Both the position numbers and the translations under genes were made by a program. A stretch of DNA of 64,000 nucleotides from Lepidodermella squamata (lineage: Eukaryota > Animalia > Gastrotricha): assembly GCA_047495785.1 (NCBI GenBank), contig JBLDXI010000021.1, forward strand, positions 992,001-1,056,000, written 5' to 3'. Every line of letters begins with the position of its first letter. Within the stretch, counting starts at the first letter, position 1. The notes beneath the pieces were generated by a model. The model was not told where the DNA came from. It worked only from the letters and a program-made list of their open reading frames with translations, and ran no database searches. Below, piece by piece: positions 1,937 through 21,000 of this stretch.

Positions 1937-4900
1937 ATGCTGAAAATTTTCGAAATTTTCATTCTTCATTTTCTAATATTCAAAATTGCCAATGGTGTGT
2001 TATTTTCAATGCCAAGTTTTAACAGAGATAACATTGATTTCCCATGTTATCCAGCTCAGAACTCGTGCACTAGTGATAGCGATTGCACCTCTCATCAAAG
2101 CTGTCAGTGGCAGAATAACGGTCATCAAGTTTGCGCGTGTATTTCCTGGCAGTGGACTGGTGCTGATTGTAACACCCGTTAGAACATTTTCGATAGCCAT
2201 CAAACCAAAAAAACAGAGTTTTGATTCTCGTTAAAACAGCCATTTGCTCCAACAAATGCGAGCCGAGGGGGACTTGTACGGCTTACAATTACTGCACCTG
2301 TTCGGCAGGTTGGACAGGGTCCAGCTACGGCTGCACTAGTCGTAAATGAATTTGAAAGTTGAGTTCTTCCATCTACAATGAGTAATATTTCTAATCAAAG
2401 CCGTTTGCTCGACCAATTGCAACAATCACGGAAACTGTGTTAGCGCCGAAACCTGCAGTTGTTGGACAGGTTGGACTGGCGACAAGTGTCAAACACGTAA
2501 ACATTTATAAATACCTACTACTGATTCCTACATGCGCTGCGTATGGTGCATTTCTGTAAAAATAATTAAGGTGACAGTATTTTTCATTACACAATTTTAA
2601 TGCCACGTTCACATGCAAACCCTCGCTAATCCTCAACATTCCAAAAGTGGTTCTCCAGATTGTGCGCATGTAGGAATAGGATTGCTCTATCGCTTTCCAT
2701 TGAGAAATGTTATTTCCGGGCTCTCTTATACCCCTCGGGTCGTCGGCTCGTCTCGGGGCTCGGGGTTTAGATTCCATTTTAGGGAGGGGAATTATATTTC
2801 TCCATGGCAAGCCATAGACCATATTCCCTCATTCAACAATGATTGTTTCATGACAGCGATCTGCGAGAACCCATGCAGCAATGGGGGCACTTGCACCCAA
2901 CCAAACCAATGCACCTGCCCTAGTGGCTACAGCCCGAGTTACTCAGCGCAACAAAGCATTGGTTGCTCCACAGGTGAACTGATTGAAGAAAGAATTACGC
3001 CTTGAAAATTGTTGAACCAAATAGCAACTTGTTCGCAATGGTGCCAAAACGGGGGCACTTGCACCGGGCCCAATACATGCACGTGTACTGCCGGCTGGAC
3101 CGGAAGTGCCTGCGATGTCGGTAAGGATAGCTTTACCAATCTTTTGCTGGTTGTTAAGAGTTTATACTTGCTAAAACAGGCACGTGCGTAAAGCCCTGTC
3201 TTAACGGAGGATATTGCAGCAAAGCACCTGATCAGTTTGTATTTGGAATTTGGACATAGAATCGGGATTAAAATCATATGTCTCCTAAAAGGTGTACCTG
3301 CGCTAGCGGTTGGAGTGGCAGTCAATGCGCTACGTGTAAGTTTAATTTGAACTCTGGTCCGAATGAGATCAAAACTTAGATGAACCAAGTTGTCTGTTCG
3401 AACGGGTGTGCCAACAATGGCAACTGCACAGGTCCACAAACTTGCACTTGTCCGCCTGGTTGGCAAGGCACAAACTCGACTTATTCAAAGGGCTGTAATA
3501 CGGGTATACCAAACGTGCTTCCTAATACCCCTTCTCATGCATCACTTTGACACAGCTATATGTACCACTCCTTGTACCAATGGAGGAAGTTGCGTTGCTC
3601 CTGATGTTTGCCGATGTCCGAATGGTATGGGAGGGCCATACTGCAACTCGACGTGCGCCACGAACAGTGACTGCCTGAATGGCGGAACATGCAGCTTCAA
3701 AACCGGAAAATGTGCCTGTGCCCCAGGCTGGACGGGAAAATTCTGCGCCACAAGTAATGCGGATGACAATTTTCGTGAATTTGTTCCATTTATTTGATAT
3801 TTAAAAAAGGCATGTGCCCGGATAATTACTGCAAAAATGGCGGCAGCTGCACTGGAAATTACACGTGTACTTGCACTGCCGATTGGAAAGATGGTACATG
3901 CTTAACTCGTGAGTTACGCTTTTGAGGATATGCCTTGTTTACTACTGCTGAATTGTACAGCCATTTGTGACAATCCATCATGCGTGAATGGCGATTGTAC
4001 CGCACCAGATACTTGCACTTGTTAGTTCAGAATCTTAATAGATCACCGCCGTAAAATTGAAGTTCTTTAGGCAAAGCTGGTTGGGAAACAGCTGCTTGCA
4101 ATGTCCGTAAGTTGAACTAATATTTTTTTATTTTTATTTTTTTGATGCTGATATTTGTGTGACAGCTATCTGTACGCCTAGATGCAGCAACGGCGGAACC
4201 TGTAAGATTTTTACTCTAATTTGACCGTGATGTCTCATCTTGCCATGTCTCATTAGGCACCTCACCTGGCGGAAAAAACTGGTGATTTTCAACTGGGGCT
4301 GCAAATGCTTAGTTTTAGTCTCTTTACCCAATATAGCTTCTGTACAGGGCAGTGGACTGGTCCTGATTGCACTCAACGTAAGAAACTTCTGAGCTTAGTC
4401 TGCTTAATGTATTGATAGCATATTTTGCCTAAACAGTTAACACGAACATTTACGTGGGTAGTCCATTCCTAAGTGGTGCAGATGGCTCGAGCACTTGGAC
4501 TTCAGGTTTCTACTGAGTAACATGCGTTCTCTCTTTTAAAAACTTATATACTTACAGATATGCTGATGAAAACTTTTGTCCCAACCGTACTTGGCCAGAC
4601 ATGTGAGTTAACTTATTACCGCCTTAATTTGATTAGAGAAGATTCTTTTAAAAAGTGACTTCGAATGACAACTGTTGTCCATGTGGCTCAATCTTCATGG
4701 AAGGTTACTGCTACTACGTCGTCAAACTACCATCCAGCATGCCATACAATGACGCTGGGGTTCAATACTATTATTCTATGAAAGCCTGTGTGGACACAGG
4801 TGGAACCCTAGCCACGTTTGCTACTGCTAGTCCTCAGGCAACACTGGCGAAATTCTTTAAATGGCTCGCGACTCAGAATAACATGCAGTTTGAAATCGAT

Positions 4901-7900
4901 CCAGTCGACTTTTTCAACCCATCTGGAACCTACCGAGATTGCTTCTTCCTCGGCATTTACAAAGCGGATGATGGGTGGTGGTGGCAGACCTCGCCCCCAG
5001 TTCAGGTGACTAGCAGCATTTGGCTCAATGGTCACTATGGTTATTACACTGATAAAGACAGATTTGCTTGCGCCATCCCAGTAAGACTTTTTACTAGAAC
5101 ATTCCAGTTGAAAACCGCTTATTTTCAAGCACAAAAGCAATCCTTACCTCTACGCATATCACAAAGACTGGGCAGGAGTACCCGTGATTTGCCAGATGAA
5201 GAATCCCTGTAAAGAAGTCTGCAAGCCAGGAACCACTAAGGTTTTCGACCGATGCTTACTCAGTGGGGACAAAACCGAACGGTTGGCCGCGAATAAGCAA
5301 TGCAACGGCAGGGGTGGCTTTCTCTCAACCATCCGTCAGCCTTATGAGCCCACCTATTGGAGGAACGCCCTTTACAACCCAGGACAAACGGATGGATTGT
5401 GGATCGGCTACAACCACTTCACATGTAAGTACTTGGGACAACTTCTCATACTAATCTAACGCGTCTTCCTTCTCAGCCGATTACTACTGGAGCTCAACGG
5501 GGGAGCAATTAGGCTACCCCAATGATATCCAATTTGACAAATCGGTGCCAGTTCCTAGAGATATGAACAAAAACAAATGTGTGATCGCTGGCAGCAATGG
5601 CTGGCTGGATGTGCAATGCAACAGTACTGCTGATCAGTATAACTTGGCTTGCCAATCAACCTACGCTGACCCTCCGCCTACTACAACTAGTCCCCCAACG
5701 ACGAGCACTACAACTACGACTACTACTACTACGACTCCTATCCCTACGACTTCTACAACGCCAGCTCCCACAACTACTGAGTCCTCGACTCCATTGGATT
5801 GTGTCACCCAATGTCCGACGCAACCTCGTGAGCGAAATATCCTATACAGGAGATGAAAACTCACTGAATTTTGATCATTTCAGCTAAATGCCCAACGGGT
5901 TACTTTTATGTCGCATGTTATGATAGTTGCTACGCAGTGGCCAAGTAAGCATCTCTAAAATATCCGCAGAGGAACATAACTTTACTTACAGCGCTGACAC
6001 TCATTACTTGGTAGCTCTAAAAAATTGTATTAACGACGGCGCTCATTTCTTCTCACCTAATTCTCAAGGAGAGTTCAATTGGATCAAAAAAATGTTGCGG
6101 ACAGATAAAACCTATTGGATAGGGGCGCAGAACTGGGCGCGGCGCAAAAGCGTGAACATTGATAATGGCAATGCCAACTTCAAAACTGCTACCGACCCGG
6201 ATGGAATGTGGAAGTGGATGAGTGGACCAGATGCGTTTCCCGTTGCGGGAATGACTGGCAGCGGCAGCTCCTTTAAAGCAGCGTCAGGTGCTACGTTTCT
6301 TACTTTCACTTCTACGATCGATAGCTCGGACTTCACAGCATATTTGACGGTCAACGCTGGGCAATGGAAAGTCGAGACTGACAAAAAATTCAAACAAAAT
6401 CGTGCGTACATCTGCGAGTATAGCGATGCTTGTTATGGCTGCAAAACGTACAGCGATCGTGACACCGTTAGGGATTGGACGAGATACAATAAAATATGTT
6501 ATCGTCCTCAAGGAAATAAAGATAACTTCTGGTATTGGGAAGCGCAGTCTGCTTGCACTGACCGACAAGCGTCGAAAATGTGGACCCCCAGAACCGAGGA
6601 CTCTCTGATATATGCTAGAATGCTCCAACGCCTTGATGACCGTACATTTTGGATTGGGATCAAACAAGATGCAGCGAATGGTCCCACTTGGGAGGATGGA
6701 ACAGATACTACCGTAGCTGATAGCTTTGATGCGGTAGATGATCTTGCGAAAGATCAGTGTGCTTACTTCATCGATGGAAATACCAAGTTCGATTTGACTT
6801 CCATTGACGCCGTTTCAGACATGCAAGATGGAGGCTGGAGGAAGACAAAATGTGACTACGGCAATTATATGCAGTTTCTGTGCCAAAAACCTGCTATTTA
6901 CAACGACGTCGATAAAGGAACTACTACTACAACAACAAGTATTACAAATATAATTTCTCTTATTTTTCTCGTTAAGTCTTCAATGATGTTCAGCTACCAC
7001 CACAACTACTACCACCACAACTACTACTACAACAACTACTACTACAACAACAACACCCGGGCCAACAACTACATACTGCGTCCAGGTTTGAGTGGGGCGT
7101 TTAAAATTGGACTCTTTACAGTCGTTAGGGTTATTTTAGGGAGGATGTTGCGTATGTCCCTGGGTGTACGATGAAACCACAGACAAATGTTACTTGTATT
7201 CTACCGACTTCATAGCTGGGTATATAGGTCTTTCCTACTCGCAAACATATTAACGTTTTTGATTCCGATTGTGTAGCCCATCTGCATCAGTAGATTACTT
7301 GTACGCTCAATGGGAGTGCGCAAAACGCGATGGTTATCTAGCCATGCCCAAGTCAGCGACCGATTTGGATTTCCTTTACTCTCGTTTCAATGAGAATGCT
7401 TATTGGACTTCCTACATGCCTAGTTTGTTGGCTGACAAATTCGCCGTCTGGTGTTTATAGGTAATTGCCTTAATATTTCAGATGCTTTTGGAATTTGGTC
7501 TTATCCTGACGGTTCGACGCTGGAAAAACAATTTCTAACTGAATACCCGCTATCAACAAATCCTTCATGTACCGCAGCAGTTCTAGATAGAACTCAGCAG
7601 GCTTTGCGACCGATTTGCGAATTTTCAACTTCAAATATGTACACTTTGGGGTCAATTAACATGACGCTGAATCAATCTTCGCAAACCTTCCCCTTCATAT
7701 GCGAAAAGCTGAACCCTTGCAAAGGTAAAGATATAGGTCCTTCCTCATCCTTCTCATTGTAAAATCTTGTAAACAGTTTGCCAAATGCCGATTGTACTGT
7801 CCAACTTGACATTATTTGACAATGGAAGAGAAATGTTTTCTGCTTTGAGAGTCGCTCCTAACAAGTGCATTTGGACGTTCCGAGAAACCGTCTCATCGAA

Positions 7901-10900
7901 TGTTAACGCAGCGACTTGTAGTATGCTCGGGCTGAAACCAGTGAAACTGTCGGAGCCGTACGAAAACCGGATGGCTAAATCGTACGTGCAAGCTTGGTCG
8001 TACTGGAACTGGACCGGCCAAGGGTTTTGGACTGACCTGGCCGTAAAAGAAATAAGTAAATACATCAATTTTGTCGAAGATCGAGTTAAAAGTTGTTAAT
8101 AATATGTTCAGCCCCTTTTGTATGGGAAGGCGAGACTACAACTTACGCTGAATATGCATTCGATAAGGATAAGCCCAGAAGCACGTACCATGAGCCGTGT
8201 GGTATTGTGGACGGAAGTAATCAGATCGATACGAAAAGCTGTGCCAATCAATACTTTCCTGTTTGCACCATTCCAAGTGCGGCTAGCTGTTCGGGTAAAT
8301 TTGTCCACCCTTAACTGTCTTTCTCTTTAATTCTATCGTTAAGACATGTGTCCATCCGGTTTTACATGGATCAACAATGGTATACCCGGAGGGACGTGCA
8401 TCGTTTTGGTAACAGCGTGAGTTATTTATGACTTGGGGATGTCGTTGTTGATAAGAACACATTGCAAACATTCAGGCAAGTGAATAGCCCAGTAACGGCT
8501 CGGCAAAAATGTTACTCAGACTTCGGAACTTACCAGTTGATATCCATTATGACTCCAAGTGTGGTTGGCGCATCGAATGGGAAAGGGCTTCTGGCACATC
8601 TTCTGTCGAAGCAGGATCTTGTCACTGGTAGTTACTATTGGATCGGTTTGGACAATAGCTTCCGAAACAACCATAATACAGACCTCGTGAGGTACACGGG
8701 AGACCCCGACTTAGGTAGGTTTACTGTCATAAATCGATGAAAATTCACCTTACTTCACCCTTCGCCTGTAGTTTGGGATTTTGACAATCACACAGCCCCG
8801 GGAATAACTGCAGGCACTCCGCCTTACCCAGACTTCTGGGGACCATCTGAGCCTATATCAAACAACGGTTGGGCCTACATCGTTTGGAATGGAACCTCGT
8901 TCTCTGTCTCAACAGCCAAACAAGGCGCGACCAATGTTTCAGCCGGTTACATTTGCGAGAGACCGAGTCCTTGTCTAACTTGCGATCCGGGATGGATATT
9001 TTTCAACGGTCACTGTTATCGAACATTCAATGCGCCGATTGATAATCGCTATACTATGCAGGCATTCAGAGCTCAATGCGATTTCTGGAATTCTTACTTG
9101 ATATCCCAAAACTCGCCCATAGAAAGCCAATTTACCCTTCTTCTAGCAAATGGAAAAACTCATTGGATCGGCCTTTACCGCAACAAGCCGTTTAATACTA
9201 CAACAGTTTCCGCCGGTACGCTCGCTCTTCACTGCTAATAACTGATATTAATTATGGGTATAACATTTTCCGGCAGATTTTTATGAATGGGATGATGGAA
9301 CTTCATTGGCGACAAACTCATTTGCTAACTGGTACGGCACAAATTGGATTGAGCCAAATGGCGGTGGGAATGGGGGCTCGAACCTGTTTGCAGAGACTGC
9401 CGCAGTCGTGAACCACATGTCTATCTCGCAATGGTTTGACGCGGACTTCTATTTGAATTGGGTTCAAATGAGCATATGCGAGAAGGATGCAAAAGTGCTG
9501 ACTCAGCGCTGTAAAGCAAGTTTGTATGAGATGAATGATTTTCTGCCCTCGTAAATTCACTTTCAATTAGCTGGCTCTTCACCGTCGATTTGCGGAGACG
9601 ATCTCTGCTCCTCCCAGTATACGACAATCCCATCTTCATACACAGCGTCAAATACCTTGTCTGGTTTCCCAGCTAGCGGTATTGCAAATAACAATGCGTG
9701 GAGTGCGGGGGCGTATCAACTTGGAGGTGATATTCAATGGATTCAAGTTGATTTTGGGGCAAATCCTATCTACTTGCGAGCCATTGCGACTCTAGGCCAC
9801 CAAAAGCTTGCTGGCTCTGTTATCATGTATCTTGTCCAAATTTCTACTGATGGAACCAATTTTCAATTTCTTTACCCGCATCGCTCACTTGCCTACTACG
9901 CTCAAATCGAAACAGCTTTTGCCGGTAACACCAATCCAACGATTCGAAATACCCAAGAGATATGTCCGCGAAGGCTCGCAAGGAAGGTCAAAATCATCAC
10001 GCGCCACTACGTCACGCATCCGTATTTCAAAGCGGAACTGAAGGGATGCGCAGCGACCGTTGCGTACAGCTCATTCTGCGAATGCTGGCTTGAGAGTTTC
10101 GATTCGTTTAGCGGAGCATCTCCTGCTACTCACTTCCCGTTTTGGGTTAACACACCGAGTTTCGACTCACAAGCTACAGGCTCTGGCGATGGAAACCCTT
10201 GGCTATCGACGCAAACAGCTGAACCTCCGCAGCCGTGGAAGCCGGAACAAATTGACTCTCAGAATTGGTACCAAGTTAATTTCAAAGTGTTGAAACTCGT
10301 GACTGGTGTTTATATGGCCGGAACCACTGGAGGAGGAATTCAAACCTACTATGTCATGTGGTCTCATACTGGTATAGCAGCCTAATTTTATTGTCATTTT
10401 TAATGAAAATCGAATTTAAGGTTATTTCTACACAATGCAATACTATTTGTCTTTGGATGGATTCCCCAAGCTGTTCAATGGCCCTGCTAATCCTGTTCGC
10501 CTAACGCAGCAAACATTTTGCCCTCCGATGAAAACTATGCTGCTACGAATTGTTCCGGTTACGTACACGTTATCGCCAACCCTCCTTTTGGATGTTTTGG
10601 CATGCTACGCCAGAGGAAAGCGATGTAACATTTATAATTATTCCTCTTTCTATTTCGTGAGCCATTTGATTGAGCCAGGTTTGGACTGTTGTGATGAGAT
10701 CGGCCTGTGTACTTGTAACTGCCCTGTCGGCTGGTCTGGTACTGATTGCAACACTGTTTCGGTGGATCGCAACTATTACATTGATGCCCAGCCTCCAAGT
10801 GAGCTCTATATCCAGCTAAATATCCTATTTCAACCATAATTCCTTCTCCAGTTTGCGAAAGCCAAGATTTAGTGCCTCTGATTGGAAATTGGGGTGGTTC

Positions 10901-13900
10901 AGTGTCGGCTTCTTCAGGAAACGCTGGCAATGCAATGGTTTCGAATGACAACAGCATAAATACAGCATGGCTGCCTGATACCACTGATACACGCCCGTTC
11001 TGGCAGGTTGATTTCGGGAAAGTTATGTCAGTGGGAATGATCGAGGTGACTGGAACGCCGAATGGTCGAGTGTTCAACTACTCCGTCTGGTTTCGATCCC
11101 AATCGTTGCCCAACCTGTACTATCCTGTTTTACAAAATCAAATCGATCACTCCTCCAATGCAACGGTTTCGGAATTAATCTCTCCTGTGCCTGTTTTGCA
11201 ATAAATATTTTTCAGGCTTTTACTGGTGGTAGGGATCTATCAGGGCTGAGATTTACGAGCACTCGATTTTGTCCAAATATACGAACCCAAGCGCTTCGAC
11301 TCGGTATCATTGGTTTCCTAACAGCGAGGTACATGAGAATCAAGGTGAAGGGATGCCCAGCCCACGCCTCTTGCTCCACGTGTTGCACTTCGAGTGACGG
11401 TTGCAAATGCAAATGCCCCATCGGCTACGTCACGAACTTTCAATCGGCTTCTTCTCTCAACCCTTGGGACCATTGCGGTAAGCTTGACGCTCCATGGATT
11501 GCCATCTTAATGGGCTGGGATTTTAGATCAATGGAACCAGCAAGCAATTGACTGTGAAGATCTCGCTATTAGACAGCCGAATTTGCCCAGTGGTGTTTAT
11601 ACAGTATTCCCGCCTGGCCAGCAACCTGTTGACGTATATTGCGAAATGCGGCTTTACGGAGGGGGCTGGACTGTCCTCCAAAAGCGAACAGATGGCTCTC
11701 AGGACTTCTTTTTGAACTGGGCTGACTACAAGAAAGGCTTTGGAACACCCGGTGTCAACTTTTGGTTAGGCAATGAAATCGCGTACAGGGTTACGGGGGC
11801 GAATCTGAACAGCTATTACCTGCTTGTTGAACTGACAACATTCGATGATGACATTGATATCGGCATTTTCGACAAATTTTACATCGACAGCGAGGCTACT
11901 TCGTATACGCTAAGAATCGGCTCTTTTCTAGACGGAAACATAAGTACTGCTGGTTATTGTTTCACTGTAGACCTGCATGTCTATTCCTTTACCAGAGGAC
12001 AGCCTGGCAGCAAGACACAGAGGATTTGCTTTCAAAACGAAGGATATCGATCAAGGCTGCGCAGGCCGATTCAAAGGAGCTTGGTGGTACAACGGATGTC
12101 ATGAAAGGTCTGATGCGGCTTTCCTCCTAGACAATTGCTTTGATAATCTATTTTTGAAGCAATCTGAACGGAGCTTATGGGAGTACAGCATATGGTGAAG
12201 GGACAAATTGGTACGCTTATAAAGGATACTATGTGTCAATGAAAAAGACACTGATGATGTTCCGGCGCTCACCACTATCAATGCCTTTGCCACGTAAGTT
12301 AGGAAAGAAAAATGTCTTATATTAATAAATGTGAACAAATTATCACAGAATATATGCCGAAATATCCCAATCCCATTGACTGTGAGGATATCCTTGACGC
12401 GAATCCACTTGCTCCGAGCAGCAGCTATGCAATTTACCCTGTCGGCGTCTCATCGGCTATCAACGTCTTCTGTGAGATGATGGCTCTCGGCGGCGGATAC
12501 ACTTCAATTCAGCGGCACTTTGATATCTCAGTCAGCTTCCTCAAAAACTGGACCGATTACAAGAACGGCTTCGGTCAAATCTCAGGAAATTACTACCTTG
12601 GTAATGAAAAGATCTGCAAAATTATAGATTTCTATTCAACAAGCCTTGCCTATAAACTATCTGTCGTGATGGAAAACGATAAGGGTGAAAAACGTACCTC
12701 GACTTATGGGACGTTTCTGTTTGGCCCGGAAAGCTCAGGTTACCCAATCTATATTAGCCGATTTGACTTTGAACAAGACATTGAGGATGGCGGCGATAGC
12801 ATGACCCGGCTAAACAAAGTAAAATTCATGACCATGGACAAGCTGCAGAATAGTTGCATGAACCCTTATACGCCATTTGGCGGCTGGTGGTACAGCTCAT
12901 GGGGCGATTGCATCGATAGCAGTCTCAATGGTCCTTATGGAGTCACTGGTTACCAGAAAGGAATGCATTGGGCATCCTGGAAAGGCAGATACCAATCCTT
13001 GAAATCAACAGCCATGCTTGTTAAACGGCTATGTAAGTGAAATAAGAGTGATAGAGGTATTGATTATATTTCAATATTATGTTGCGGTTATCCCAGACCC
13101 TAAACCAGTTGATTGTGCTGACATTCTTGCTCTGAACTCTAAATCTGCGAGTGATGTTTACTGGATATACCCTTTTGGAATGTCCCCAATTCAAACTTGG
13201 TGTGACTTCGACTCGGATTTTAATTCACTTGGAACAGGATGGACAGTAAGAGCCTTCGTAGTTGCCAGTCTTACGATATATTTATATTATCCTAATAACA
13301 GGTCATTCAGCGACGAATTAACGGCGACGTATCTTTCAATCGAATTTGGAGCGAATACAAAACTGGCTTTGGAAATCTTGATGGGGACTTCTGGCTAGGT
13401 TTCTGGCCTGAAACTTTCAAGTTTCATGAACTTGAACTTTTTATCTATATATGACATAGGTAACGATAAGATATTCAAGCTGCTAAATCAAGGGGCTTAT
13501 TCTTTAATGATTGGATTGTTAAATGATGCCAATGACTTCATGAAGTATGCTTACTACGAGGATTTCAGGTAAGATTTTCTTCTTTGAATTGAGATTAATA
13601 ACCTATTGATCTCAGGCTAACATCCGAGGTGTTGGGTTACCAGCTATACGTTGATAATTACGACAAAGGCCCAAGTAACATGAGTAAGCTCAAGCCTAAA
13701 ACGGAGAACGTTTTTTGATTAAAGGTTTACATCTAGGTGATAGCTTTTCCAAGCATAATGCTCTGCAATTCGGCACGAAGGACCGTCCAGGGAATAATTA
13801 CTGCGCGGGTCAGTACGAAAGCGGCTGGTGGTTCGACAAGCCGGATGAAAATGATAAATGCTCACGATCCACGAATCTTAACGGCCGATTTAACGAATCC

Positions 13901-16900
13901 TCAAGTGATTCTTCAATAGCCTGGGACTCATCGACGAATAAGCGCTACTCCGGAACAGTCATGATGATCATGCGAAAGTCCATTTTGAATCTACCAAATA
14001 CGGACACAAAAGTGTTGAGCACAAATCCGCTTGTATTACTGCACGAGTGCAAACACACGTATCAGCAAATATCGGGGGATAGTTTCCGCCTTAATATAGG
14101 AATGCTAGGCATATACGCTGGGGAGGACCTAGTATGCCAACGTAAGAAACTAGTCCCAGTTTTTTCTCCATATTCCTAAATTTTATGTACTTAAGCTTAT
14201 CCTGAACCGCAAGACTGCTCTTACATGCAATTGAAAGATGACACTTATCAATCAATGACCTATGATTCACTGTATTCAAACGATCTGAACTTTTTCACCG
14301 CCTATTGTGACATGAACACCATGGGTGGAGGTTGGACTGTTATCCAACGACGGATCGACAACTCTCAAAGTTTCCAGCAGGATCTAGATTCCTACGAGTC
14401 CAGTTTCGGAGCGGCTCATGCTAATTTCTGGATTGGGACTAAGGCCATTCGATCCCTGACCCAATCTGCTGATTACGAGTTACTAGTGGAGGTGCGAAAA
14501 GGCGACCTGTACGCCTTTGCTCTATACGATAGCTTCTATACGACTGGAGATACAAATATACTGTCAATTAGCGGCTATCAATCGTGCTCGACAGCCGGCG
14601 ATTCCTTGAGCCAACTCAAATCACAGCCCTTCGTTTTCGATTCATGCGGCCTCGGGTCTTGGTGGTTCAAGTACCAATCTAGCTGCTACCCTCTCCAATC
14701 TTCACTTAATGCCCCTTACAGCGCAAGCTCTTGTGAAAAAGGTATATTCTGGTCGACTTACAATGCTTACCCCTCTTGCTCTCAACTTGATCGGACGGAG
14801 ATGAAAATTCGACGAAAAACTGATCATGGCTACTACATAAAGGTGGCTAACTACTCGTGTGACCAGCCAACTATTGCCACGATCTCTCTCGCGACAGCAA
14901 CCCCGGTTATTGAGTGCCAAAAGGCCTGCACGTCCTATTCTGGAAAGGATGCACCTTGCGTTGTAGCAGTGACGAATCGTGTGGATCAATGCCTTCTCAA
15001 AGCGAAACAGTGCAGTCCGGGCGGATCGAAATCTGGTCAAGTAGACCAGAAGTTCGACACATACTATAGAATGGATAATTGTGACTACATCTCGAACTGT
15101 GGTCCGCCGCCCTCAATGTTCGGAGCCACTTCTCAGATCGTGTCGATGCCCACACAAATGGCCATCAACTACACATGCAGGCCAGGGTTTCAAAACTCGG
15201 CATTCCAAGGTGACTCAACCCTCCTTACCTGCTCCGGGAAGTACTGGAGTGGAAAGTGGCTTGACTGCCGTACCCTTTGCGGTGATCTGCCTTCGATGCC
15301 GAATGCCACGCTTGTCTCGACAACAACGGAAGATGGCGTAATCACGATGGTGTACACTTGCAATGATGAGTTCGACTACATATCAGGCGATTTGACTAGA
15401 ATTTGCGCTAAGCCCTATGGAAACGGCTGGAGAGGCGAGGAAGTTGTCTGCGTTTCAACACGATGCCCTGCGCCGCCTAACCTTTCGCATGGCTGGGCAA
15501 ATTACACGCGACCCCAAGTCATTGCTGATCGAACGAAACGGGGTACAGTGTGGAACTACACGTGTGACAGCGGTTATCTCTTCGGGAGTAATCTTCAGAA
15601 GTCCAGCTTGATACAATGCGGGGATGAACGGAAGTGGGTGCCAACAACACCTGGGACTTGCATTCGTAAGTTTAATCTATAGCCCGTCCCATTTAAGACA
15701 CATTGTCACTCGTTAGTTTTATTAGCCCCTCAACCCTTCAGAAGTTTCTCATGCCTCTAATTAGGGCAAAAGGTGACGACGTAGTTGGTGTAAGCTTTGC
15801 TCTGGCAGCTATAGGTCGAGGTTCCATCGTCGTAGGCGAACTGAAAAACAGGGAGTTAGCGAATATTAAGCTCGATCGAATACTTAAATTCTTACAGAAT
15901 AAGCGGTGGGACAGTTATCCTTGAAGAACTTGGGGTAGTTGGACGGCCAGGTTCTCGGATCGCACGCCTTCTGGTCAGGACTTCCGCACTTGGCGTTCAA
16001 GGGCGAGCAGTTGTAGGTACCACGGCAGCAATACTGGTCAGTGTTGAATTTGGCACAAGCGCTAAGACAGGCGATAACACGTCCATCTTTGCTTGTCATT
16101 TGCAGCTCCTTGGGGCAATTCTTCCTCAGATCGACTGAACAGCCACACCATTGGCACAGGCCGACATTAGCGTCGTAAGTTCCTGTAAAAAAGAGCAGTG
16201 AGGAAAGTGAAAATCGACTGGGTGAAACAAACCTGCGACTGGCTCCATGGAAATCGGGATGGTTGAGCCGTCGACGTAGCTGATGTCGAAGACGTCGAGG
16301 GTGTTCGGGCCCTCGGCGTTGAGTTCAGCCAAAGACGTAACCTCACCAGTCGCTCCGTTGCACTCCTTCATATTACCGCAACGGCCAGTTTCGCAATTCA
16401 AGTTGCCGTTGTTGTCAAGGGTGCAGTTGGTACGGGCCCAGATGCGACCAGACAGGAATCGCCCGCCGAGGTCAAGACAGGTCTTCTCACCAGCCTTCAT
16501 CAACCAACCTCCGTTCTTCGGCTGCGGGTCCTGGCGACGGAAAGCCGCGGCCCAAACCTCGTGTTTGCAGTTGTTGATGACAGTGATACGGTACTGGCTC
16601 GTCGTGACGGGGCACGCGGCAATCGTGGAGGACGGCGGGCGGGGTGTGGTTGTCGGCGGCTTGACAGAGTTGTCGGCGAATCCGCAGATCTGGTCCTGAT
16701 CAGCTACGGCGTTAGCGTTAGCCTTGGTCGCGCCGCCCTTCTTCATCCAGCAGGTTCCACCTTGGTAGTTGTTCCAGGTGTAATGGGTGCAATCCTTGGT
16801 CGTGTAGCAAGTATAGGCGCAGTATTGTTTAGCGCTCTTCGTATTGCTCAGATCATTGCCTGAAAAGTCACAACCCGCTGCGAAATTCCCGGTCCATGTC

Positions 16901-17683
16901 AGACCAGCCGCCTGGGTAGTATGAGCGAAGAGGGCTGTCGCGAAAATAGTTATAATAGAGTGCATTTTTTCAAAGGTCGAGAGAAAAGTCGTGTGAAAAA
17001 TGGTGGGTAATTACTGCGTATTTAAGCCGTTCCGCTTCGTCGGGTAATTCCGACCCCGGGAATGAAAGATATTTGCCCTTCCGGATTTTATTTACTTAAC
17101 GCCATGTCTGCCCATATTCGCGTTTTCGCTGCTAACCGGTGGTTATTCAGCTGCCTTCTGTGCTCTCTAGAAATTTCAGAGATGAAACAAATTATGGTCG
17201 GAGATCATAATGCCCAAAAAGTTGGGTCAATCTAGGTCGCTTCATTCGCTCACGATGAAAATATGTTATTTCATTCCCATTTTTTGTCAGCATTCAGTTG
17301 CACCAAACCGAGCAGTTTTGACAATGTGGCGACAAATCCTACGCTGACAAATGCTTCAAACATTTTTGAATGGGAGTCAAGCATCTACTTCGAGTGTCTT
17401 AGCGAGATGGTTCTGGATCCTCTCGGCTGGGACAGCAATGTCACGATTTCCTGTGTTGGCAATCAAACTTGGCTCATTGTAAACTACGTCGGTCCGGACG
17501 GACCTTCGCCAAAGACGTGGCTTCCAACTAGGTGTACAGGTAACCCAGAAAAGGGAACGGGGATGAGGATGATTAAAATTGAGGTCAACAACGCCATAAA
17601 ATGTGGCACCACTGGTCGTGTAGCTTAATTCAGTTGCGTATTTCTGTTCAGCTTCGCGCGGGGAGCTTTTTAAGGGCGACTGA
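1937..17683 (+). CDS. Giant multi-exon secreted mosaic protein: signal peptide, ~12 EGF, 8 C-type lectin, 3 F5/8C (discoidin), 4 fibrinogen-C, PAN, ~5 sushi/CCP
   Basis: Signal peptide [20 protein letters not shown]. CxNGGxC..CxCxxGWTG repeats at 2030-4377; CTL motifs (WIG, FICE) at 4655-9490; WIQVDF/WYQVNF/WQVDF discoidin motifs at 9600-11360; GGGWTVxQxR..GGWW fibrinogen domains at 11530-14820; CCP repeats at 15100-17540. The splice junctions I checked are in phase. The last exon ([10 protein letters not shown], ~17652-17683) is tentative. Confidence 0.85.
5670..5790 (+). repeat. Coding ACN-rich low-complexity repeat (Thr/Pro mucin-like linker)
   Basis: Encodes [36 protein letters not shown] between lectin domains. 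Confidence 0.9.
6920..7075 (+). repeat. Coding ACT/ACA/ACC repeat (second poly-Thr linker, split by an intron)
   Basis: actactactacaacaaca and accaccacaactact arrays between lectin domains 4 and 5. Confidence 0.85.
15757..16965 (-). CDS. Secreted PAN/Apple + thaumatin-like protein (PR-5 family), 3 exons, nested antisense in intron 15666-17290 of the mosaic gene
   Basis: Signal peptide; PAN_4-type [16 protein letters not shown]...GTCWMK; Pro/Thr linker; thaumatin motifs [34 protein letters not shown]...[12 protein letters not shown]|FAYDD..TYSC...VTFCP*. Two short GT-AG introns. Confidence 0.95.
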
Positions 17684-18039
17684 CCTCCACGTGGTGCTCC
17701 CTGGATCCATTATTTTTATGGAACCAACAAGTCGCCCGCCTTTGATATATTTGACTATTGCAAGCTTTGCCAAAAGCACTGTAAATTGCCAAAAATCAAT
17801 TGGAAAAATTCTCCGAACAACTTTAATATCGCCTTTTATTTCTGAAAACATCTGTAACATAGCTATTTACACGAAGACGGAGTTGTTTTCATGAGTATTA
17901 AAATGAATAAAAAGCGCTCATGAAATGTAAACAATGCATAAGTATAATATTGATAATAATAATAATTTTTTTGTACAAAAATATCGCTTCACATTGCACA
18001 GTATTATAGCGGTGAGTAAAAGTGACAGATATTCGAAAT

Positions 18040-21000
18040 TCAATGAACCGAATCGATTTTACCGTTCCACATGCGGTAGTCGGTTTCAGCCGCGTCAACC
18101 GCCACGCTCGGCATGAACGGCCCGCGATCGCAGCGAGGCGTTTTCGGCGGTGGCTCTAGAATATCAACCGACAAATCAGACTCGGCCATAAATGGCGAGT
18201 TGTTGTTTTCCGTTATCGGTTGTAGCACGTCATCGCCGGCGCTTTGAGATTTCCGATTTCCAACACTATTCGCACCGTTGCTGAGACTGAATGATATGCT
18301 TGTCCTGGTTTCATCCGGATTGCGGCCGCTTTTCAACATCATCGAATCATCCGATGGCTGCTTAGTTATTTGTATCGCCGGGATGGTGGTTAGTAAGGAA
18401 TCAGATTCGCCCCCGGTCGGTCGCCGCTGGTTCGGAATTTTCGAAGCCGCCGTCGCGGTTTCAATCGAGGTCATCGAACTCGAGCTGGCAACTGACCGGC
18501 GAACCATTTTTTTGTAATAACGGCCCATTTTTATATGCTGATAGTAGAACATGAATTTGCTGGTGACGATGGGCAGAACGAAGCCGATGACAAGAATGCC
18601 GCAGGAGGCACACAACGCAGCGATAAAGCAACCTTGGCCGGATTTCGGAGTAATATCACCATAACCTGAAATTTGGCAACAAATTAATTGTTTTCAATTT
18701 TTTCAATTTTATGAAAATTGTCAATATTTTTTTAATTTAATTTTTAATAATTTAATTTTTAACATAAATTAATTCGATTTTTAATTTTAAAAATAAAAAA
18801 TTCCCCTCTCTAATTTTAAATTTTCAAATTTTTAAAAGTTTCACTTACCAACTGTTGTCATTGTAATTGCAGCCCAATAAATAGATATCGGAATCGAAGT
18901 GAACCGATCTCTTGCATCGACGTAGTACATGATGGTGCCGAAAAACAGGATGCCGATGATACATATCGTAAGAAGAGTACTCATTGGGCCAACAATAGCT
19001 CGAGCCGTGTAGTACAGCACATTGAGGCCGTAATTCCATTTGGCGAGGCGGAAAATTCGCAGTAATCGCAACGATCGGAAGACCTCAAGAACCTCCCACA
19101 TCTGTTTTCGACAGAAAAAAGCCAATTAATCGAAAAGAAACCAGAAGAAAATGGGCTAAAAGAGTTGGCATATGAGAAATTTAATGTAACACTTCACGCA
19201 GCAAGCCAACAAAATTGAAGCGAGCAGTATAAAGATTGGAAGCTGAATAATTTTGCGATTGAAATATTGATACAGAAAATAATTAATTAATTTGAAAGAA
19301 CAGTCTTAGGTTCAAGCAGTTAATCAATTCAATACATTCCAGTAGCTATTAATCGCACACGCGTTGAAAAACTGGAATAAAAGCCTTACTTTAGAGCCTA
19401 AGCCATTTTTCTGGATTCAAGTGATAATGAAAAATCATCAGGTGAGGTGAAATAATTATTTTCAACAAAATTAAAACCAAATTATTAATGATGAAAACCA
19501 TCGCCGATTAAAAACCCTCAGAGAAACGATGAAAAAATAATAGCCGATCAATTATCGCGCATACCATAATTTTAGAGAGAAAAATGCGGATGCGATTAAC
19601 ATAAAATTCTGGCGTTTTTTCACATCGAAACGAGAAAATAACAACGACAACGTAAAAATTAATAGTAAGGACAGCGCTTTCTTTCATCAGCGTGCTAATT
19701 ACCTGAAACGAGCGCCTCCAGGTAGGTCCCTGAAAATAATTTTTACCACAGGTGATGAAAATTACGTTGACATCAGTTTCATTCATTCGAACCAAACAAA
19801 TTTAGAAAAAATAATAACAGATTATGCCTGCTATTTTTACCTGATTGTAAGCCATTCGAGTGAGAAGGGAAAAGCACAGTTCGACATAGAACGGAACCAG
19901 CGCCAGGGCGTCGACGAGATTGAGGCGGCTCTTGAAAAATTCCAGCTTATTCGGCGAGACAAAGAACCGAACAAGCAAATCGAGCGTGAAAAACGCCGCC
20001 GCGAAATAGTCAATAAACCACAGCGTTGTCGCGATGTAACACTCCGTCACGGTTGGATTCGGTTCAACTGTGAACGGGCCCCCTTTCGATACAAATCGTT
20101 CAGTTTTCACGTCGTACGAAAGTGGACACGGCGTTTGAGTGACCGGAGGTTCTAATATAGGTTCGGTTAAATTTGTCAAATTTGTCCCATTTGCTAGGGT
20201 TAAATTTTGCGGATTTGCCAATCGATCGCACAGCCGAACGAGGTCACCGAAATGGCGGACGAATTTGTAATTATTAAGGAGGACGTCGATTTGCGGAAGA
20301 GTTTCGATAATAAAGCCAGATATTGAAAGCGCAACCATGATAATTGTTATCCACGAATACGTTGTAGCGAATTTGGACGAGAATGGATTTTCGAGAAAGT
20401 TCCACACCTGCATGCGGAAGGGAACTTTTTTCGGGTTATCCACCGAGCCGAACCCACTGCACGATTGCGTTTCTTCGGCCGGGTCTTTGACGAGTTGCTC
20501 GTACCAAATTTTCATCGCCTCTTTCTGAGCCCGGAATCTGTCGTAGCGTGCGAAGCAACATGGCGCTAACATGTTGGGAAAGACGTTAAGGCGGCGCATT
20601 TCGCGAAGTGATTTTTCGATGCACACTTTTTTAGGCAGGTGCAAATCGCCGGTGCGGAAAAAGTCGAACACTTCCTCGAACACTTCGGCGCTGCAGTCGA
20701 CGAAAAACTGGTCCGATTTTTCGTCGTAACGCACTGTTTGCGGCAGAGTTAGCGCCTTGCGCTTCATTAAATCGCGCATGTGCGGGTTATTGGTGCGGAA
20801 CGTCCGACCGCTCGCCTTTATCTTACACGTTTCGAAAATTGATCCGCCGGCCTAGAATAAAAAAATAACTTTAACAATCTATTAGGCAACAGACGGGACC
20901 TAGCTGGGACAATGTACAATCAAAGCGATGGCTAAATTTTAAGCTGGAAATACCTTGCGCTTTTTTTTCCCAATTAAGCTGGAACTTTTTAATTTAATTA

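What the first reader, a model, noticed from the sequence alone, without database searches (positions are those of the whole stretch)
1937..17683. Giant mosaic protein combining three lectin/recognition folds with EGF, PAN and sushi arrays
Seen: the order is SP - EGF x~12 - CTL x8 (two poly-Thr stalks; only CTL8 shows an EPN motif) - F5/8C x3 with Cys-rich spacers - fibrinogen-C x4 - PAN - CCP x4, plus one degenerate CCP at ~13985-14140. No transmembrane segment is visible. My rough length estimate is 3,500-4,000 aa. Known: CTL, discoidin and fibrinogen-related domains are separate invertebrate pattern-recognition and adhesion modules; I recognise no named protein with this order. Inference: a multivalent secreted agglutinin, or a mucus, adhesive or food-capture protein.
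Basis: partly seen in the sequence, partly recalled or inferred. Interest (0 to 1): 0.8.

Follow-up and report, generated by a model that had tools for sequence, protein, structure and literature searches.

The report
Giant multi-lectin gene ending in ribozyme
This small invertebrate (other scan notes guess a rotifer) has one intact gene for a secreted protein of about 3,750 residues that strings together three kinds of sugar- or surface-recognition domains. Just past its coding end lies a conserved, predicted self-cutting RNA, an unusual way for an animal gene to end.

Summary
My model has 48 GT-AG exons (1937-17628, + strand) and encodes 3,754 aa. Order: signal peptide, 12 EGF, 8 C-type-lectin-like domains with two poly-Thr stalks, 3 discoidin (F5/8C), 4 fibrinogen-C, PAN, 3 sushi and a sushi-like last exon. 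There is no membrane segment.

Forty-five of 47 introns are 43-64 nt. All 10 listed exonic differences from a second DNA data set are synonymous. One intron is confirmed by RNA.

Three metagenome relatives (40-53% identity) cover parts of the last ~820 residues. In two of them the last exon sits ~57 nt after the previous one. In the window that intron is 1,625 nt and holds an expressed antisense gene.

No protein among 1.84 billion representatives matches the FBG4-PAN-sushi module over its length except two of those fragments. I found no named protein with this order.

Five of the eight lectin-like domains, PAN, the sushi-like last exon and the "degenerate sushi" rest on weak evidence or patterns only. 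Function is inferred: a multivalent extracellular binder.

New here is an HDV-like ribozyme candidate at 17660-17735. It has compensatory changes and lies at the same place in two relatives. The scan earlier noted such a ribozyme behind another giant lectin gene of this genome.

The parts
1937..1993 (+). Start codon and predicted signal peptide (aa 1-19)
   Evidence: Highest hydropathy window of the whole protein. The ORF opens at ATG 1937. The split of exon 1/2 at 1995-2054 is uncertain.
1994..4376 (+). Array of 12 EGF-like domains in about 15 short exons, linked by P-[IV]-C
   Evidence: Pfam EGF_2/EGF/hEGF/EGF_TEN hits. Six-cysteine pattern in all 12 units of the curated model.
4437..4602 (+). 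Two doubtful linker exons (4437-4505, 4558-4602)
   Evidence: Chosen only by my exon-chaining script. A direct in-frame splice 4377->4656 is equally possible.
4667..5661 (+). CTLD-like repeats 1 and 2
   Evidence: CTLD hallmarks in the alignment of the 8 repeats. For the CTL1 exon, 37 of 40 nearest language-model clusters are Lectin_C. No Pfam hit and AF2 pLDDT 40.
5671..5739 (+). Poly-Thr/Pro stalk 1 (aa 777-799)
   Evidence: Read directly from the translation.
5818..6889 (+). CTLD 3 and 4
   Evidence: Pfam Lectin_C E 1.2e-11, two stretches.
6920..7058 (+). Poly-Thr stalk 2 (aa 1159-1186), split by intron 6939-6993
   Evidence: Curated splice restores a run of 27 Thr.
7080..8962 (+). CTLD-like repeats 5, 6 and 7
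   Evidence: Hallmark pattern only. No Pfam hit.
8963..9488 (+). CTLD 8, with the only EPN motif (aa 1787) and no WND
   Evidence: Pfam Lectin_C E 0.0025-0.004 on its first half. Motif scan.
9591..11359 (+). Three F5/8C (discoidin) domains (9591-10052, 10161-10617, 10786-11359) with an EGF-like spacer at 10678-10755
   Evidence: Pfam F5_F8_type_C E 1.9e-14 and 2.3e-7. Middle copy 17.3 bits against an HMM of the other two, shuffles at most 4.4. Nearest solved chains are factor V/VIII C domains and the CASPR2 discoidin domain.
11360..11476 (+). Cysteine-rich spacer
   Evidence: Translation. No family hit.
11550..14848 (+).
   Evidence: Pfam Fibrinogen_C E 1.5e-31 to 8.5e-38. FBG2 is nearest to FIBCD1, MFAP4, angiopoietin-like, tachylectin-5A and ficolins. 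RNA joint 13245->13302 matches the model intron. 10 of 10 listed exonic SNPs are synonymous.
14861..15088 (+). PAN/apple-like domain
   Evidence: Nearest language-model clusters are PAN_1/PAN_4, score 0.94. Foldseek top hits are HGF NK1, SML-2 and apple domains but E>1 on a low-confidence model. No Pfam hit.
15092..15664 (+). Three sushi/CCP domains
   Evidence: Pfam Sushi E 2.6e-10. Many multi-CCP proteins match profile positions 255-445.
15666..17290 (+). Intron 47 (1,625 nt). The same intron is about 57 nt in relatives L001 and L002
   Evidence: tblastn alignments.
15658..16913 (-). Expressed, spliced antisense gene nested in intron 47. Its poly(A) site at 15658 lies 8 nt inside the host exon
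   Evidence: RNA contigs with CT..AC joints 15840/15896 and 16181/16232, and a poly-T loose end at 15658.
17291..17539 (+). Last conserved exon, sushi-like, ending ...TRCT
   Evidence: 47.7% and 43.9% identity over alignments that run through it in L002 and L001. Pfam Sushi E 0.081.
17540..17659 (+). Unconserved tail or 3' UTR. Unspliced stop at 17626-17628. Optional intron 17540-17651 would move the stop to 17681-17683
   Evidence: All acceptors listed in three loci, with no conserved tail. One ATTAAA at 17572 lies before the stop and none follows it.
17660..17735 (+). HDV-like (drz-Agam-1-type) self-cleaving ribozyme candidate. Cut predicted between 17659 and 17660
   Evidence: Rfam RF01787: 22.1 bits in the window and 27 bits in L001, below gathering 37. 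A double-pseudoknot descriptor hits once in 64 kb and never in 60 random 64-kb sequences. 56 of 56 cells pair, with compensatory changes in P1 and P2.

Best explanation
Window 1937-17628 (+) is a single intact gene of about 48 exons. It encodes a secreted, heavily disulphide-bonded protein of about 3,750 residues: signal peptide, 12 EGF, 8 C-type-lectin-like domains on two O-glycosylated poly-Thr stalks, 3 discoidin, 4 fibrinogen-C, PAN, 3 sushi and a sushi-like last exon. Inferred: it works outside the cell as a long multivalent binder. Many weak recognition modules of three folds, held on EGF and mucin-like spacers, would cross-link glycans or surfaces. That means an agglutinin or opsonin, or a matrix, mucus or adhesive component. 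Most lectin-like modules have lost the canonical calcium-sugar motifs, so binding need not be to sugars. The best candidates for classical ligand sites are FBG1 (keeps C-H-E-S-N-L-N-G) and CTL8 (EPN). Also inferred: the primary transcript is cut by a conserved HDV-like ribozyme starting 31 nt after the unspliced stop codon. This cut either makes the mRNA 3' end and stops read-through into the convergent neighbour 60 nt further on, or limits expression.
For: One gene: the frame stays open through 48 exons with GT-AG at all 47 introns, and 45 introns are 43-64 nt long. All 10 listed exonic differences to DNA run X2 are synonymous third-position changes, and the other 5 fall in model introns. An RNA contig skips exactly intron 13246-13301. 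Relatives L002 and L001 keep FBG3/FBG4-PAN-sushi-last exon in one line at 44-48% identity, with the last intron at the same codon, and the short contig L005 covers FBG4 and PAN at 40-53%. Secreted: signal peptide present and no other hydrophobic window. Domains. Ribozyme. It is the only descriptor hit in the window and in each of L001 and L002. No A[AT]TAAA lies between the stop and the neighbour's poly(A) site at 17796.
Against: No transcript spans the gene. RNA support is one junction at depth about 6, with 24 nt on the shorter side. Two linker exons, the exon 1/2 split and the last splice are unproven. Five CTLD-like repeats and PAN are not seen by Pfam, and both AF2 models were poor. No relative covering the 5' two thirds was found, so conservation of the whole architecture is unknown. 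Ligand binding is untested. The ribozyme scores below Rfam's gathering cut-off and is not listed in a whole-window scan. Three sequences give no significant shuffle statistic (60 of 500). In L002 no stop codon precedes the ribozyme, and in L001 an AATAAA lies 70 nt behind it, so its role is unclear.
Confidence: 0.6

Rival explanations
1. The stretch holds two or more adjacent genes or independently expressed isoforms (for example an EGF-CTL gene and a discoidin-FBG-sushi gene, perhaps separated by spliced-leader trans-splicing), not one giant protein.
For: No RNA contig spans the domain blocks. Other scan notes report spliced-leader genes in this genome, so internal trans-splice sites are conceivable. 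No relative was found for the 5' part.
Against: There is no in-frame stop and no new start or signal peptide at any block boundary. The boundaries are ordinary 49-53-nt phase-compatible introns.
Confidence: 0.1
2. It is mainly a structural extracellular protein (matrix, mucus, glue or feeding filter). Its lectin-like folds would serve as inert or protein-binding building blocks rather than as pattern-recognition sites.
For: Seven of eight CTLDs lack EPN/QPD and none has WND. FBG2-4 have altered calcium and acetyl-site motifs. EGF arrays and poly-Thr stalks are typical of matrix and mucin proteins (established knowledge).
Against: FBG1 keeps the C-H-x-S-N-L-N-G stretch shared with FIBCD1, ficolin and tachylectin-5A (the role of that motif is from memory). 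Very low RNA depth in the one run is not what an abundant structural product would give, though tissue and stage are unknown.
Confidence: 0.25
3. The ribozyme-like element is not a working part of this gene. It would be a chance match or the relic 5' head of a retroelement that landed behind an ancestral gene copy.
For: Most HDV-like ribozymes in animals sit at retrotransposon 5' ends (PMC2950038). This genome has ribozyme-headed mini-retroelements according to other scan notes. The same core occurs in unrelated metagenome contigs L003/L004. Rfam scores are below gathering.
Against: It sits 125-155 nt after the last cysteine codon in three loci that share only about 45% protein identity and have different neighbours. 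Flanking DNA does not align, while P1 and P2 changed by compensatory pairs and P4 stays a hairpin of different sequence. There is no ORF or shared element body behind it. The descriptor gives 0 hits in 60 random 64-kb sequences.
Confidence: 0.15
4. The gene is a decaying or silent pseudogene.
For: Very low RNA depth.
Against: It has 3,754 open codons, all splice sites are intact, 10 of 10 exonic SNPs are synonymous, and relatives are conserved.
Confidence: 0.03

Closest known systems
Selectins and lectican G3 domains (aggrecan, versican)
   Same: They combine EGF, C-type lectin-like and sushi/CCP modules in one extracellular chain.
   Different: They have one CTLD with a working calcium-sugar site, a different order (CTLD-EGF-CCP or EGF-CTLD-CCP), and a membrane anchor or proteoglycan core. 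They have no discoidin, fibrinogen-C or PAN.
Tenascins
   Same: An EGF array is followed further on by a C-terminal fibrinogen-C globe. Tenascin-R and tenascin-C FBG are among the solved hits, and P0164 and P0141 are of this kind.
   Different: Tenascins have FN3 repeats and an N-terminal assembly region and a single FBG. Here there is no FN3, four tandem FBG domains, and lectin and discoidin blocks in between.
FBG lectins: FIBCD1, ficolins, tachylectin-5A, invertebrate FREPs
   Same: FBG2 matches FIBCD1 at E 4.9e-30 and tachylectin-5A at 3.4e-24. FBG1 keeps the C-H-x-S-N-L-N-G stretch.
   Different: Those are short chains that oligomerise through collagen, coiled-coil or Ig regions. Here four FBG domains are strung in one chain, and three have altered site motifs.
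Caspr/neurexin IV family
   Same: They combine a discoidin domain, EGF and a fibrinogen-like region. The CASPR2 discoidin domain is a solved hit.
   Different: Caspr proteins have laminin-G domains and a membrane anchor, and no CTLD, PAN or sushi.
Other database mosaics with tandem FBG (P0063: sushi x3 - olfactomedin - FBG x4; Plectus Lectin_C+FBG proteins P0016, P0046)
   Same: They show that tandem FBG arrays and CTL+FBG fusions occur in invertebrates.
   Different: None has the EGF-CTLx8-discoidinx3-FBGx4-PAN-sushi order, and none matches the FBG4-PAN-sushi profile over its whole length.
HDV-like ribozymes (Rfam RF01787 drz-Agam-1) and the Clec2 3'-UTR hammerhead
   Same: The P3/L3 core matches the drz-Agam-1 consensus at 12 of 13 positions in the window and at all 13 in L001, and J4/2 is C-N-A-A. 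Like the rodent Clec2 hammerhead, a self-cleaving motif sits behind the coding region of a lectin-type gene (PMC2950038).
   Different: It scores below the family gathering score and activity is untested. Most known animal HDV-like ribozymes head retrotransposons or lie in introns, whereas this one is gene-linked and conserved across relatives. The Clec2 ribozyme is a hammerhead, a different fold.

Membership tests
C-type lectin-like domain (Pfam PF00059) | Sequence match to the family profile above its curated score | tested here: met
   Exon 5927-7171 (CTL3/CTL4) scores 45.7 bits against a cut-off of 22.6. CTL8 scores 18.4-19.0 bits, below the cut-off. CTL1, 2, 5, 6 and 7 have no hit.
C-type lectin-like domain (Pfam PF00059) | All eight repeats are homologous CTLDs | tested here: inconclusive
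   Shared C-x-C-P-x-G, WIG, W-x-W/D-G and [FI]-C-E hallmarks. CTL1 sits next to Lectin_C clusters by language model. However, an HMM of CTL3/4/8 gives the others at most 5.2 bits, versus 7.7 for the best shuffle, and the AF2 model of CTL1 has pLDDT 40.
Calcium-dependent sugar-binding C-type lectins | EPN or QPD motif together with WND | tested here: not met
   One EPN (aa 1787, CTL8), no QPD and no WND anywhere.
Fibrinogen-related domain (PF00147) | Profile match above the cut-off, four times | tested here: met
   110.4, 130.8, 39.6 plus 28.0 (split copy) and 94.1 bits against a cut-off of 22. Solved relatives at E 5e-30.
Ficolins / tenascins | Collagen-like region (ficolin), or FN3 repeats plus an N-terminal assembly domain (tenascin) | tested here: not met
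   No such Pfam hits on any exon.
Discoidin / F5/8C (PF00754) | Profile match above the cut-off | tested here: met
   54.3 and 31.4 bits against a cut-off of 28.2. The middle copy is supported only by an HMM of the other two (17.3 bits).
Sushi/CCP (PF00084) | Profile match, four cysteines and the conserved Trp | tested here: met
   41 bits against a cut-off of 20.7 for the exon holding CCP1-3. The last exon scores only 13.8 bits, E 0.081. The 'degenerate CCP' at 13985-14140 has no hit.
PAN/apple (PF00024, PF14295) | Profile match or PAN fold | tested here: inconclusive
   No Pfam hit. Language-model neighbours are PAN_1/PAN_4. AF2 pLDDT 49, and Foldseek top hits are PAN proteins at E>1.
Selectins | N-terminal CTLD-EGF-CCPn followed by a membrane anchor | tested here: not met
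   The order differs and there is no hydrophobic segment.
HDV-like ribozymes | Nested double pseudoknot: P1 of 7 bp starting at the cut site, P2, 3-bp P3 with a 7-nt L3, 2-bp P1.1, P4 hairpin, and C-N-A-A in J4/2 | tested here: met
   The descriptor is met once in the window and once in each of L001, L002 and L003, with 0 hits in 60 random 64-kb sequences. 56 of 56 cells pair, and P1 and P2 each have a compensatory pair.
HDV-like ribozymes | Rfam RF01787 gathering score (37 bits) | tested here: not met
   22.1 bits (window) and 27.0 bits (L001). The model cannot score the pseudoknotted P1. Not listed in the whole-window scan.
HDV-like ribozymes | Site-specific self-cleavage leaving a 5'-OH on G1 | not testable with these tools
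   Needs in-vitro transcription or 3'/5'-end mapping of RNA.

The most novel reading that the evidence does not exclude
Giant secreted lectin-type genes of this animal lineage may end their transcripts with a dedicated HDV-like ribozyme instead of, or on top of, a poly(A) signal. This gene, two metagenome relatives and, according to earlier scan notes, a second unrelated giant lectin gene all show it. That would be a gene-linked, selected use of a self-cleaving RNA for mRNA 3'-end formation, fast termination before a convergent neighbour, or dosage control.
Probability: 0.3. Interest if true: 0.8.

Novelty: new variant of a known kind. Interest (0 to 1): 0.58.

Why it matters
The protein puts C-type-lectin-like, discoidin and fibrinogen-type modules, usually studied as separate invertebrate recognition molecules, on one secreted chain. 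It is therefore a natural test case for how multivalency and mixed specificities are combined. Each module can be expressed and arrayed separately.

The ribozyme may matter more. Conserved, gene-linked HDV-like ribozymes directly behind coding regions are, as far as my paper searches reach, not described for animals. The nearest parallel is the hammerhead in rodent Clec2 3' UTRs. A second case in this genome (earlier scan notes) suggests a rule rather than an accident, and that rule can be tested with simple cleavage and 3'-end mapping experiments.

Tried and rejected
- **First exon-chaining run.** It skipped about 12 short exons and added a false exon at 18090-18247. That exon is rejected because the minus-strand neighbour's poly(A) site is at 17796. 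It was replaced by a retrained run plus hand curation.
- **DNA run X2.** I hoped it was RNA, because its word share of 0.68-0.72 is close to the exon fraction. It covers the introns, so it is DNA.
- **Coding reading of the conserved block at 17676-17740.** Rejected: the three loci need three different frames.
- **Retroelement behind the ribozyme.** No ORF or shared body was found.
- **AF2 on the CTL1 exon and on PAN.** Both models were too poor to use.
- **HMM of the three Pfam-supported CTLDs.** It failed to find the other five.
- **Word search with the CTL3-4 exon.** It found nothing.
- **Taxon identification.** The potassium-channel neighbour gave only a metagenome hit at my too-strict E-value. 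The atlas taxa were uninformative.
- **Metagenome scan with the ribozyme core.** It found only an unrelated locus, present twice.
Full report
**What is in the sequence.** The + strand between 1.9 and 17.7 kb is a chain of open frames separated by very short gaps.

Pfam on single exons gives:
- EGF-type domains between 2197 and 3794.
- Lectin_C in 5927-7171 (E 1.2e-11) and weakly in 8741-9235.
- F5/8C in 9555-10382 (E 1.9e-14) and 10803-11201 (E 2.3e-7).
- Fibrinogen_C four times between 11511 and 14700 (best E 8.5e-38).
- Sushi in 14195-15679 (E 2.6e-10).

**Gene model.** My first exon-chaining script skipped many small exons. I retrained the splice and codon scores on its short introns, favoured introns of 42-70 nt and fixed the start at ATG 1937. 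I then hand-checked the EGF region, the second poly-Thr run and the CTL7, F5/8C-3 and FBG3 gaps.

The result has 48 exons, all introns GT-AG, and 3,754 codons without a stop. Forty-five of the 47 introns are 43-64 nt. The exceptions are 2497-2856 (360 nt) and 15666-17290 (1,625 nt).

Layout in residues:
- signal peptide 1-19
- 12 six-cysteine EGF units, 20-433
- a linker
- CTLD-like repeats 1-8, 476-1832, with poly-Thr runs at 777-799 and 1159-1186
- F5/8C x3, 1850-2388, with an EGF-like spacer and a Cys-rich spacer
- FBG x4, 2436-3370, with a conserved 53-aa spacer before FBG4
- PAN-like, 3375-3450
- three sushi, 3452-3642
- a sushi-like last exon, 3643-3724
- a 30-aa tail

The strongest hydrophobic window is the signal peptide and there is no membrane segment. 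The protein has 199 Cys and 28 N-glycosylation sequons. The one EPN is in CTL8, and there is no QPD or WND.

**How solid each domain is.**
- Solid by Pfam: EGF, CTL3/4, F5/8C-1 and -3, FBG1-4 and sushi.
- F5/8C-2 scores 17.3 bits against an HMM of the other two, versus at most 4.4 bits for 600 shuffles.
- CTL8 is just below Pfam's cut-off.
- CTL1, 2, 5, 6 and 7 have no Pfam hit even at E 10 and are not found by an HMM of CTL3/4/8. They share the long-form CTLD hallmarks in an alignment of all eight. For the CTL1 exon, 37 of its 40 nearest language-model clusters are Lectin_C.
- The PAN piece has PAN_1/PAN_4 clusters as nearest neighbours.
- AF2 models of the CTL1 exon and of PAN were poor (pLDDT 40 and 49). 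The Foldseek top hits for PAN (HGF NK1, SML-2, apple domains) are not significant.
- The last exon is sushi-like at E 0.081.
- The 'degenerate CCP' spacer is conserved in relatives but unassigned.

**One gene, alive.**
- No block boundary carries a stop, a start or a second signal peptide. The boundaries are ordinary short in-frame introns.
- Of two sequencing runs that hold the region, X2 covers introns and exons alike, so it is DNA of a strain or copy about 2% different. Of its 15 listed differences in 11.9-13.0 kb, 10 lie in my exons and all 10 are synonymous third-position changes. The other 5 lie in my introns.
- X1 is RNA: its contigs skip introns and carry poly-T ends. On this gene it has only thin cover (12.1-13.5 kb, depth 6 or less), but one contig skips exactly intron 13246-13301. 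The gene is therefore transcribed and spliced, at a low level in that sample.

**Relatives.** A word search with exon 14195-15679 found two metagenome proteins at 54% and 42% identity. All other hits share only the FBG domain.

Their contigs L002 and L001 start inside the gene. They align to my model over residues 2936-3745 (47.7%) and 3154-3726 (43.9%). A third fragment, L005, from another sample, covers FBG4-PAN at 40-53%.

In L001 and L002 the last exon follows the sushi exon after about 57 nt, at the same codon where the window has its 1,625-nt intron. So exon 17291-17539 belongs to the gene, and the big intron is a local novelty.

That intron holds an antisense gene that is strongly expressed and spliced in X1. 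Its poly(A) site at 15658 lies 8 nt inside the host exon.

**Is the architecture known?** A profile of the FBG4-PAN-sushi exon was run against 1.84 billion representative proteins. Only the two metagenome fragments matched it over its length. Everything else matched either the FBG or the sushi part.

Long FBG hits that I scanned are other mosaics: sushi-olfactomedin-FBGx4, FBGx3-EGF-LRR-TIR, and tenascins. The CTL3-4 exon has no detectable relative. A full-text search for the domain combination gave no named protein.

The whole order therefore appears undescribed and lineage-restricted. Whether the relatives share the 5' two thirds is unknown.

**Likely function (inferred).** The protein has a signal peptide, no anchor, EGF and mucin-like spacers and about 19 modules of three recognition folds. 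That argues for a long secreted multivalent binder: an agglutinin or opsonin, or a matrix, mucus or glue component.

Classical sites are mostly degenerate. FBG2 aligns best to FIBCD1, MFAP4, angiopoietin-like proteins, tachylectin-5A and ficolins but lacks their D-x-D and C-H motifs. FBG1 keeps C-H-E-S-N-L-N-G, which from memory belongs to the acetyl-group pocket of that family. CTL8 keeps EPN only. The discoidin domains are nearest to factor V/VIII C domains and the CASPR2 discoidin domain.

**The 3' end and the ribozyme.** After the last conserved cysteine codon the three loci do not align, except for a block of about 75 nt.

Rfam matches this block, end to end, to the HDV-like drz-Agam-1 ribozyme. 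The scores are 22.1 bits in the window (E 0.018-0.036 in a 200-400-nt search) and 27 bits in L001, against a gathering score of 37. The model cannot score the pseudoknotted P1 helix. The hit is not listed in a whole-window scan.

Read by eye and by script, all HDV-like features are present:
- P1 of 7 bp (GGGGAGC with GCUCCCU)
- P2 of 6-7 bp (GCGACU with AGUCGC)
- P3 (ACC with GGU) and a 7-nt L3
- P1.1 (GG with CC)
- a P4 hairpin that differs in sequence in each locus
- J4/2 with C-N-A-A

A descriptor of this fold hits once in the 64-kb window (17660-17735) and once in each related locus. It never hits in 60 random 64-kb sequences. The descriptor was written after seeing the sequences, although it follows the general HDV-like design.

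On the three-sequence alignment, 56 of 56 cells pair, against 22-56% when partners are slid. P1 and P2 each carry one compensatory change. With three sequences the shuffle control is not significant (60 of 500).

A metagenome scan with the core found only one other, unrelated locus without an ORF behind it.

**What the ribozyme might do.** The predicted cut, between 17659 and 17660, lies 31 nt after the unspliced stop (17626-17628). It would then use the UGA inside the ribozyme as the stop, so cleavage would remove the stop codon.

The tails are not conserved and no single rule fits all three loci. In L002 no stop precedes the ribozyme.

The nested gene and the convergent neighbour both end about 17-30 nt after an ATTAAA. 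This gene has no A[AT]TAAA between its stop and the neighbour's poly(A) site at 17796, only 60 nt past the ribozyme. L002 has none either. L001 has an AATAAA 70 nt behind the ribozyme.

I therefore favour, without proof, a role in making the 3' end or in fast termination. The alternative is down-regulation, as shown for the hammerhead in rodent Clec2 3' UTRs (PMC2950038).

Earlier notes of this scan (s1-374168, s1-379555) report an HDV-like ribozyme directly behind another giant lectin gene of the same genome. I could not check that claim. It means the scan has seen this kind of element before on other DNA. Paper searches found no description of such gene-linked HDV-like ribozymes.

**Verdict.** The protein is a new arrangement of well-known modules, which is common in invertebrates, so on its own it is of moderate interest. 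The conserved ribozyme-like element at its end raises the interest and is directly testable.

Noticed in passing
window 15658-16913 (-): The antisense gene nested in intron 47 is strongly expressed in RNA run X1 (depth 100-330). It is spliced at 15841-15895 and 16182-16231 and polyadenylated at 15658 after an ATTAAA. Its transcript overlaps the last 8 nt of the host exon. Relatives L001 and L002 have only a ~57-nt intron there, so the nested gene arrived recently.
   Followed up: partly
window 17796 (-): The poly(A) site of the convergent potassium-channel-like gene (CDS pieces 18043-20851, minus strand) lies only 60 nt from the 3' end of the ribozyme candidate. In L002 a convergent ankyrin gene call ends about 40 nt behind the ribozyme.
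   Followed up: partly
L003 1821-1876 (-) and L004 (same sequence): An HDV-like ribozyme has the same P1' and L3 core (P1 GGGAAGU, P2 GAGCUG/CAGCUC, minimal P4). It sits in an AT-rich, ORF-free eukaryote-like contig seen in two metagenomes, one labelled plant metagenome, and is unrelated to the giant gene.
   Followed up: partly
window 2497-2856: This is the only other long intron (360 nt) of the gene, inside the EGF array. I saw no EGF-like frame in it and did not check it for a mobile element or a lost exon.
   Followed up: no
window 11901-17900 versus run X2: DNA run X2 (coded organism B) differs from the window by roughly 2% here, with small indels in introns (13286, 13710, 14159). It could be another strain, an allele or a diverged second genome copy.
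   Followed up: no
L001 2570-3844 (+): A 424-aa ORF without any Pfam family lies about 225 nt behind the ribozyme of relative L001, after a run of N. I did not examine whether it is a gene of its own.
   Followed up: no
window 19805-20851 (-): A potassium-channel-like gene (BTB_2 plus Ion_trans by its relative P0199) has only one relative at E<=1e-20 in the word search, a metagenome protein at 70% identity. The lineage is poorly represented in protein databases.
   Followed up: partly
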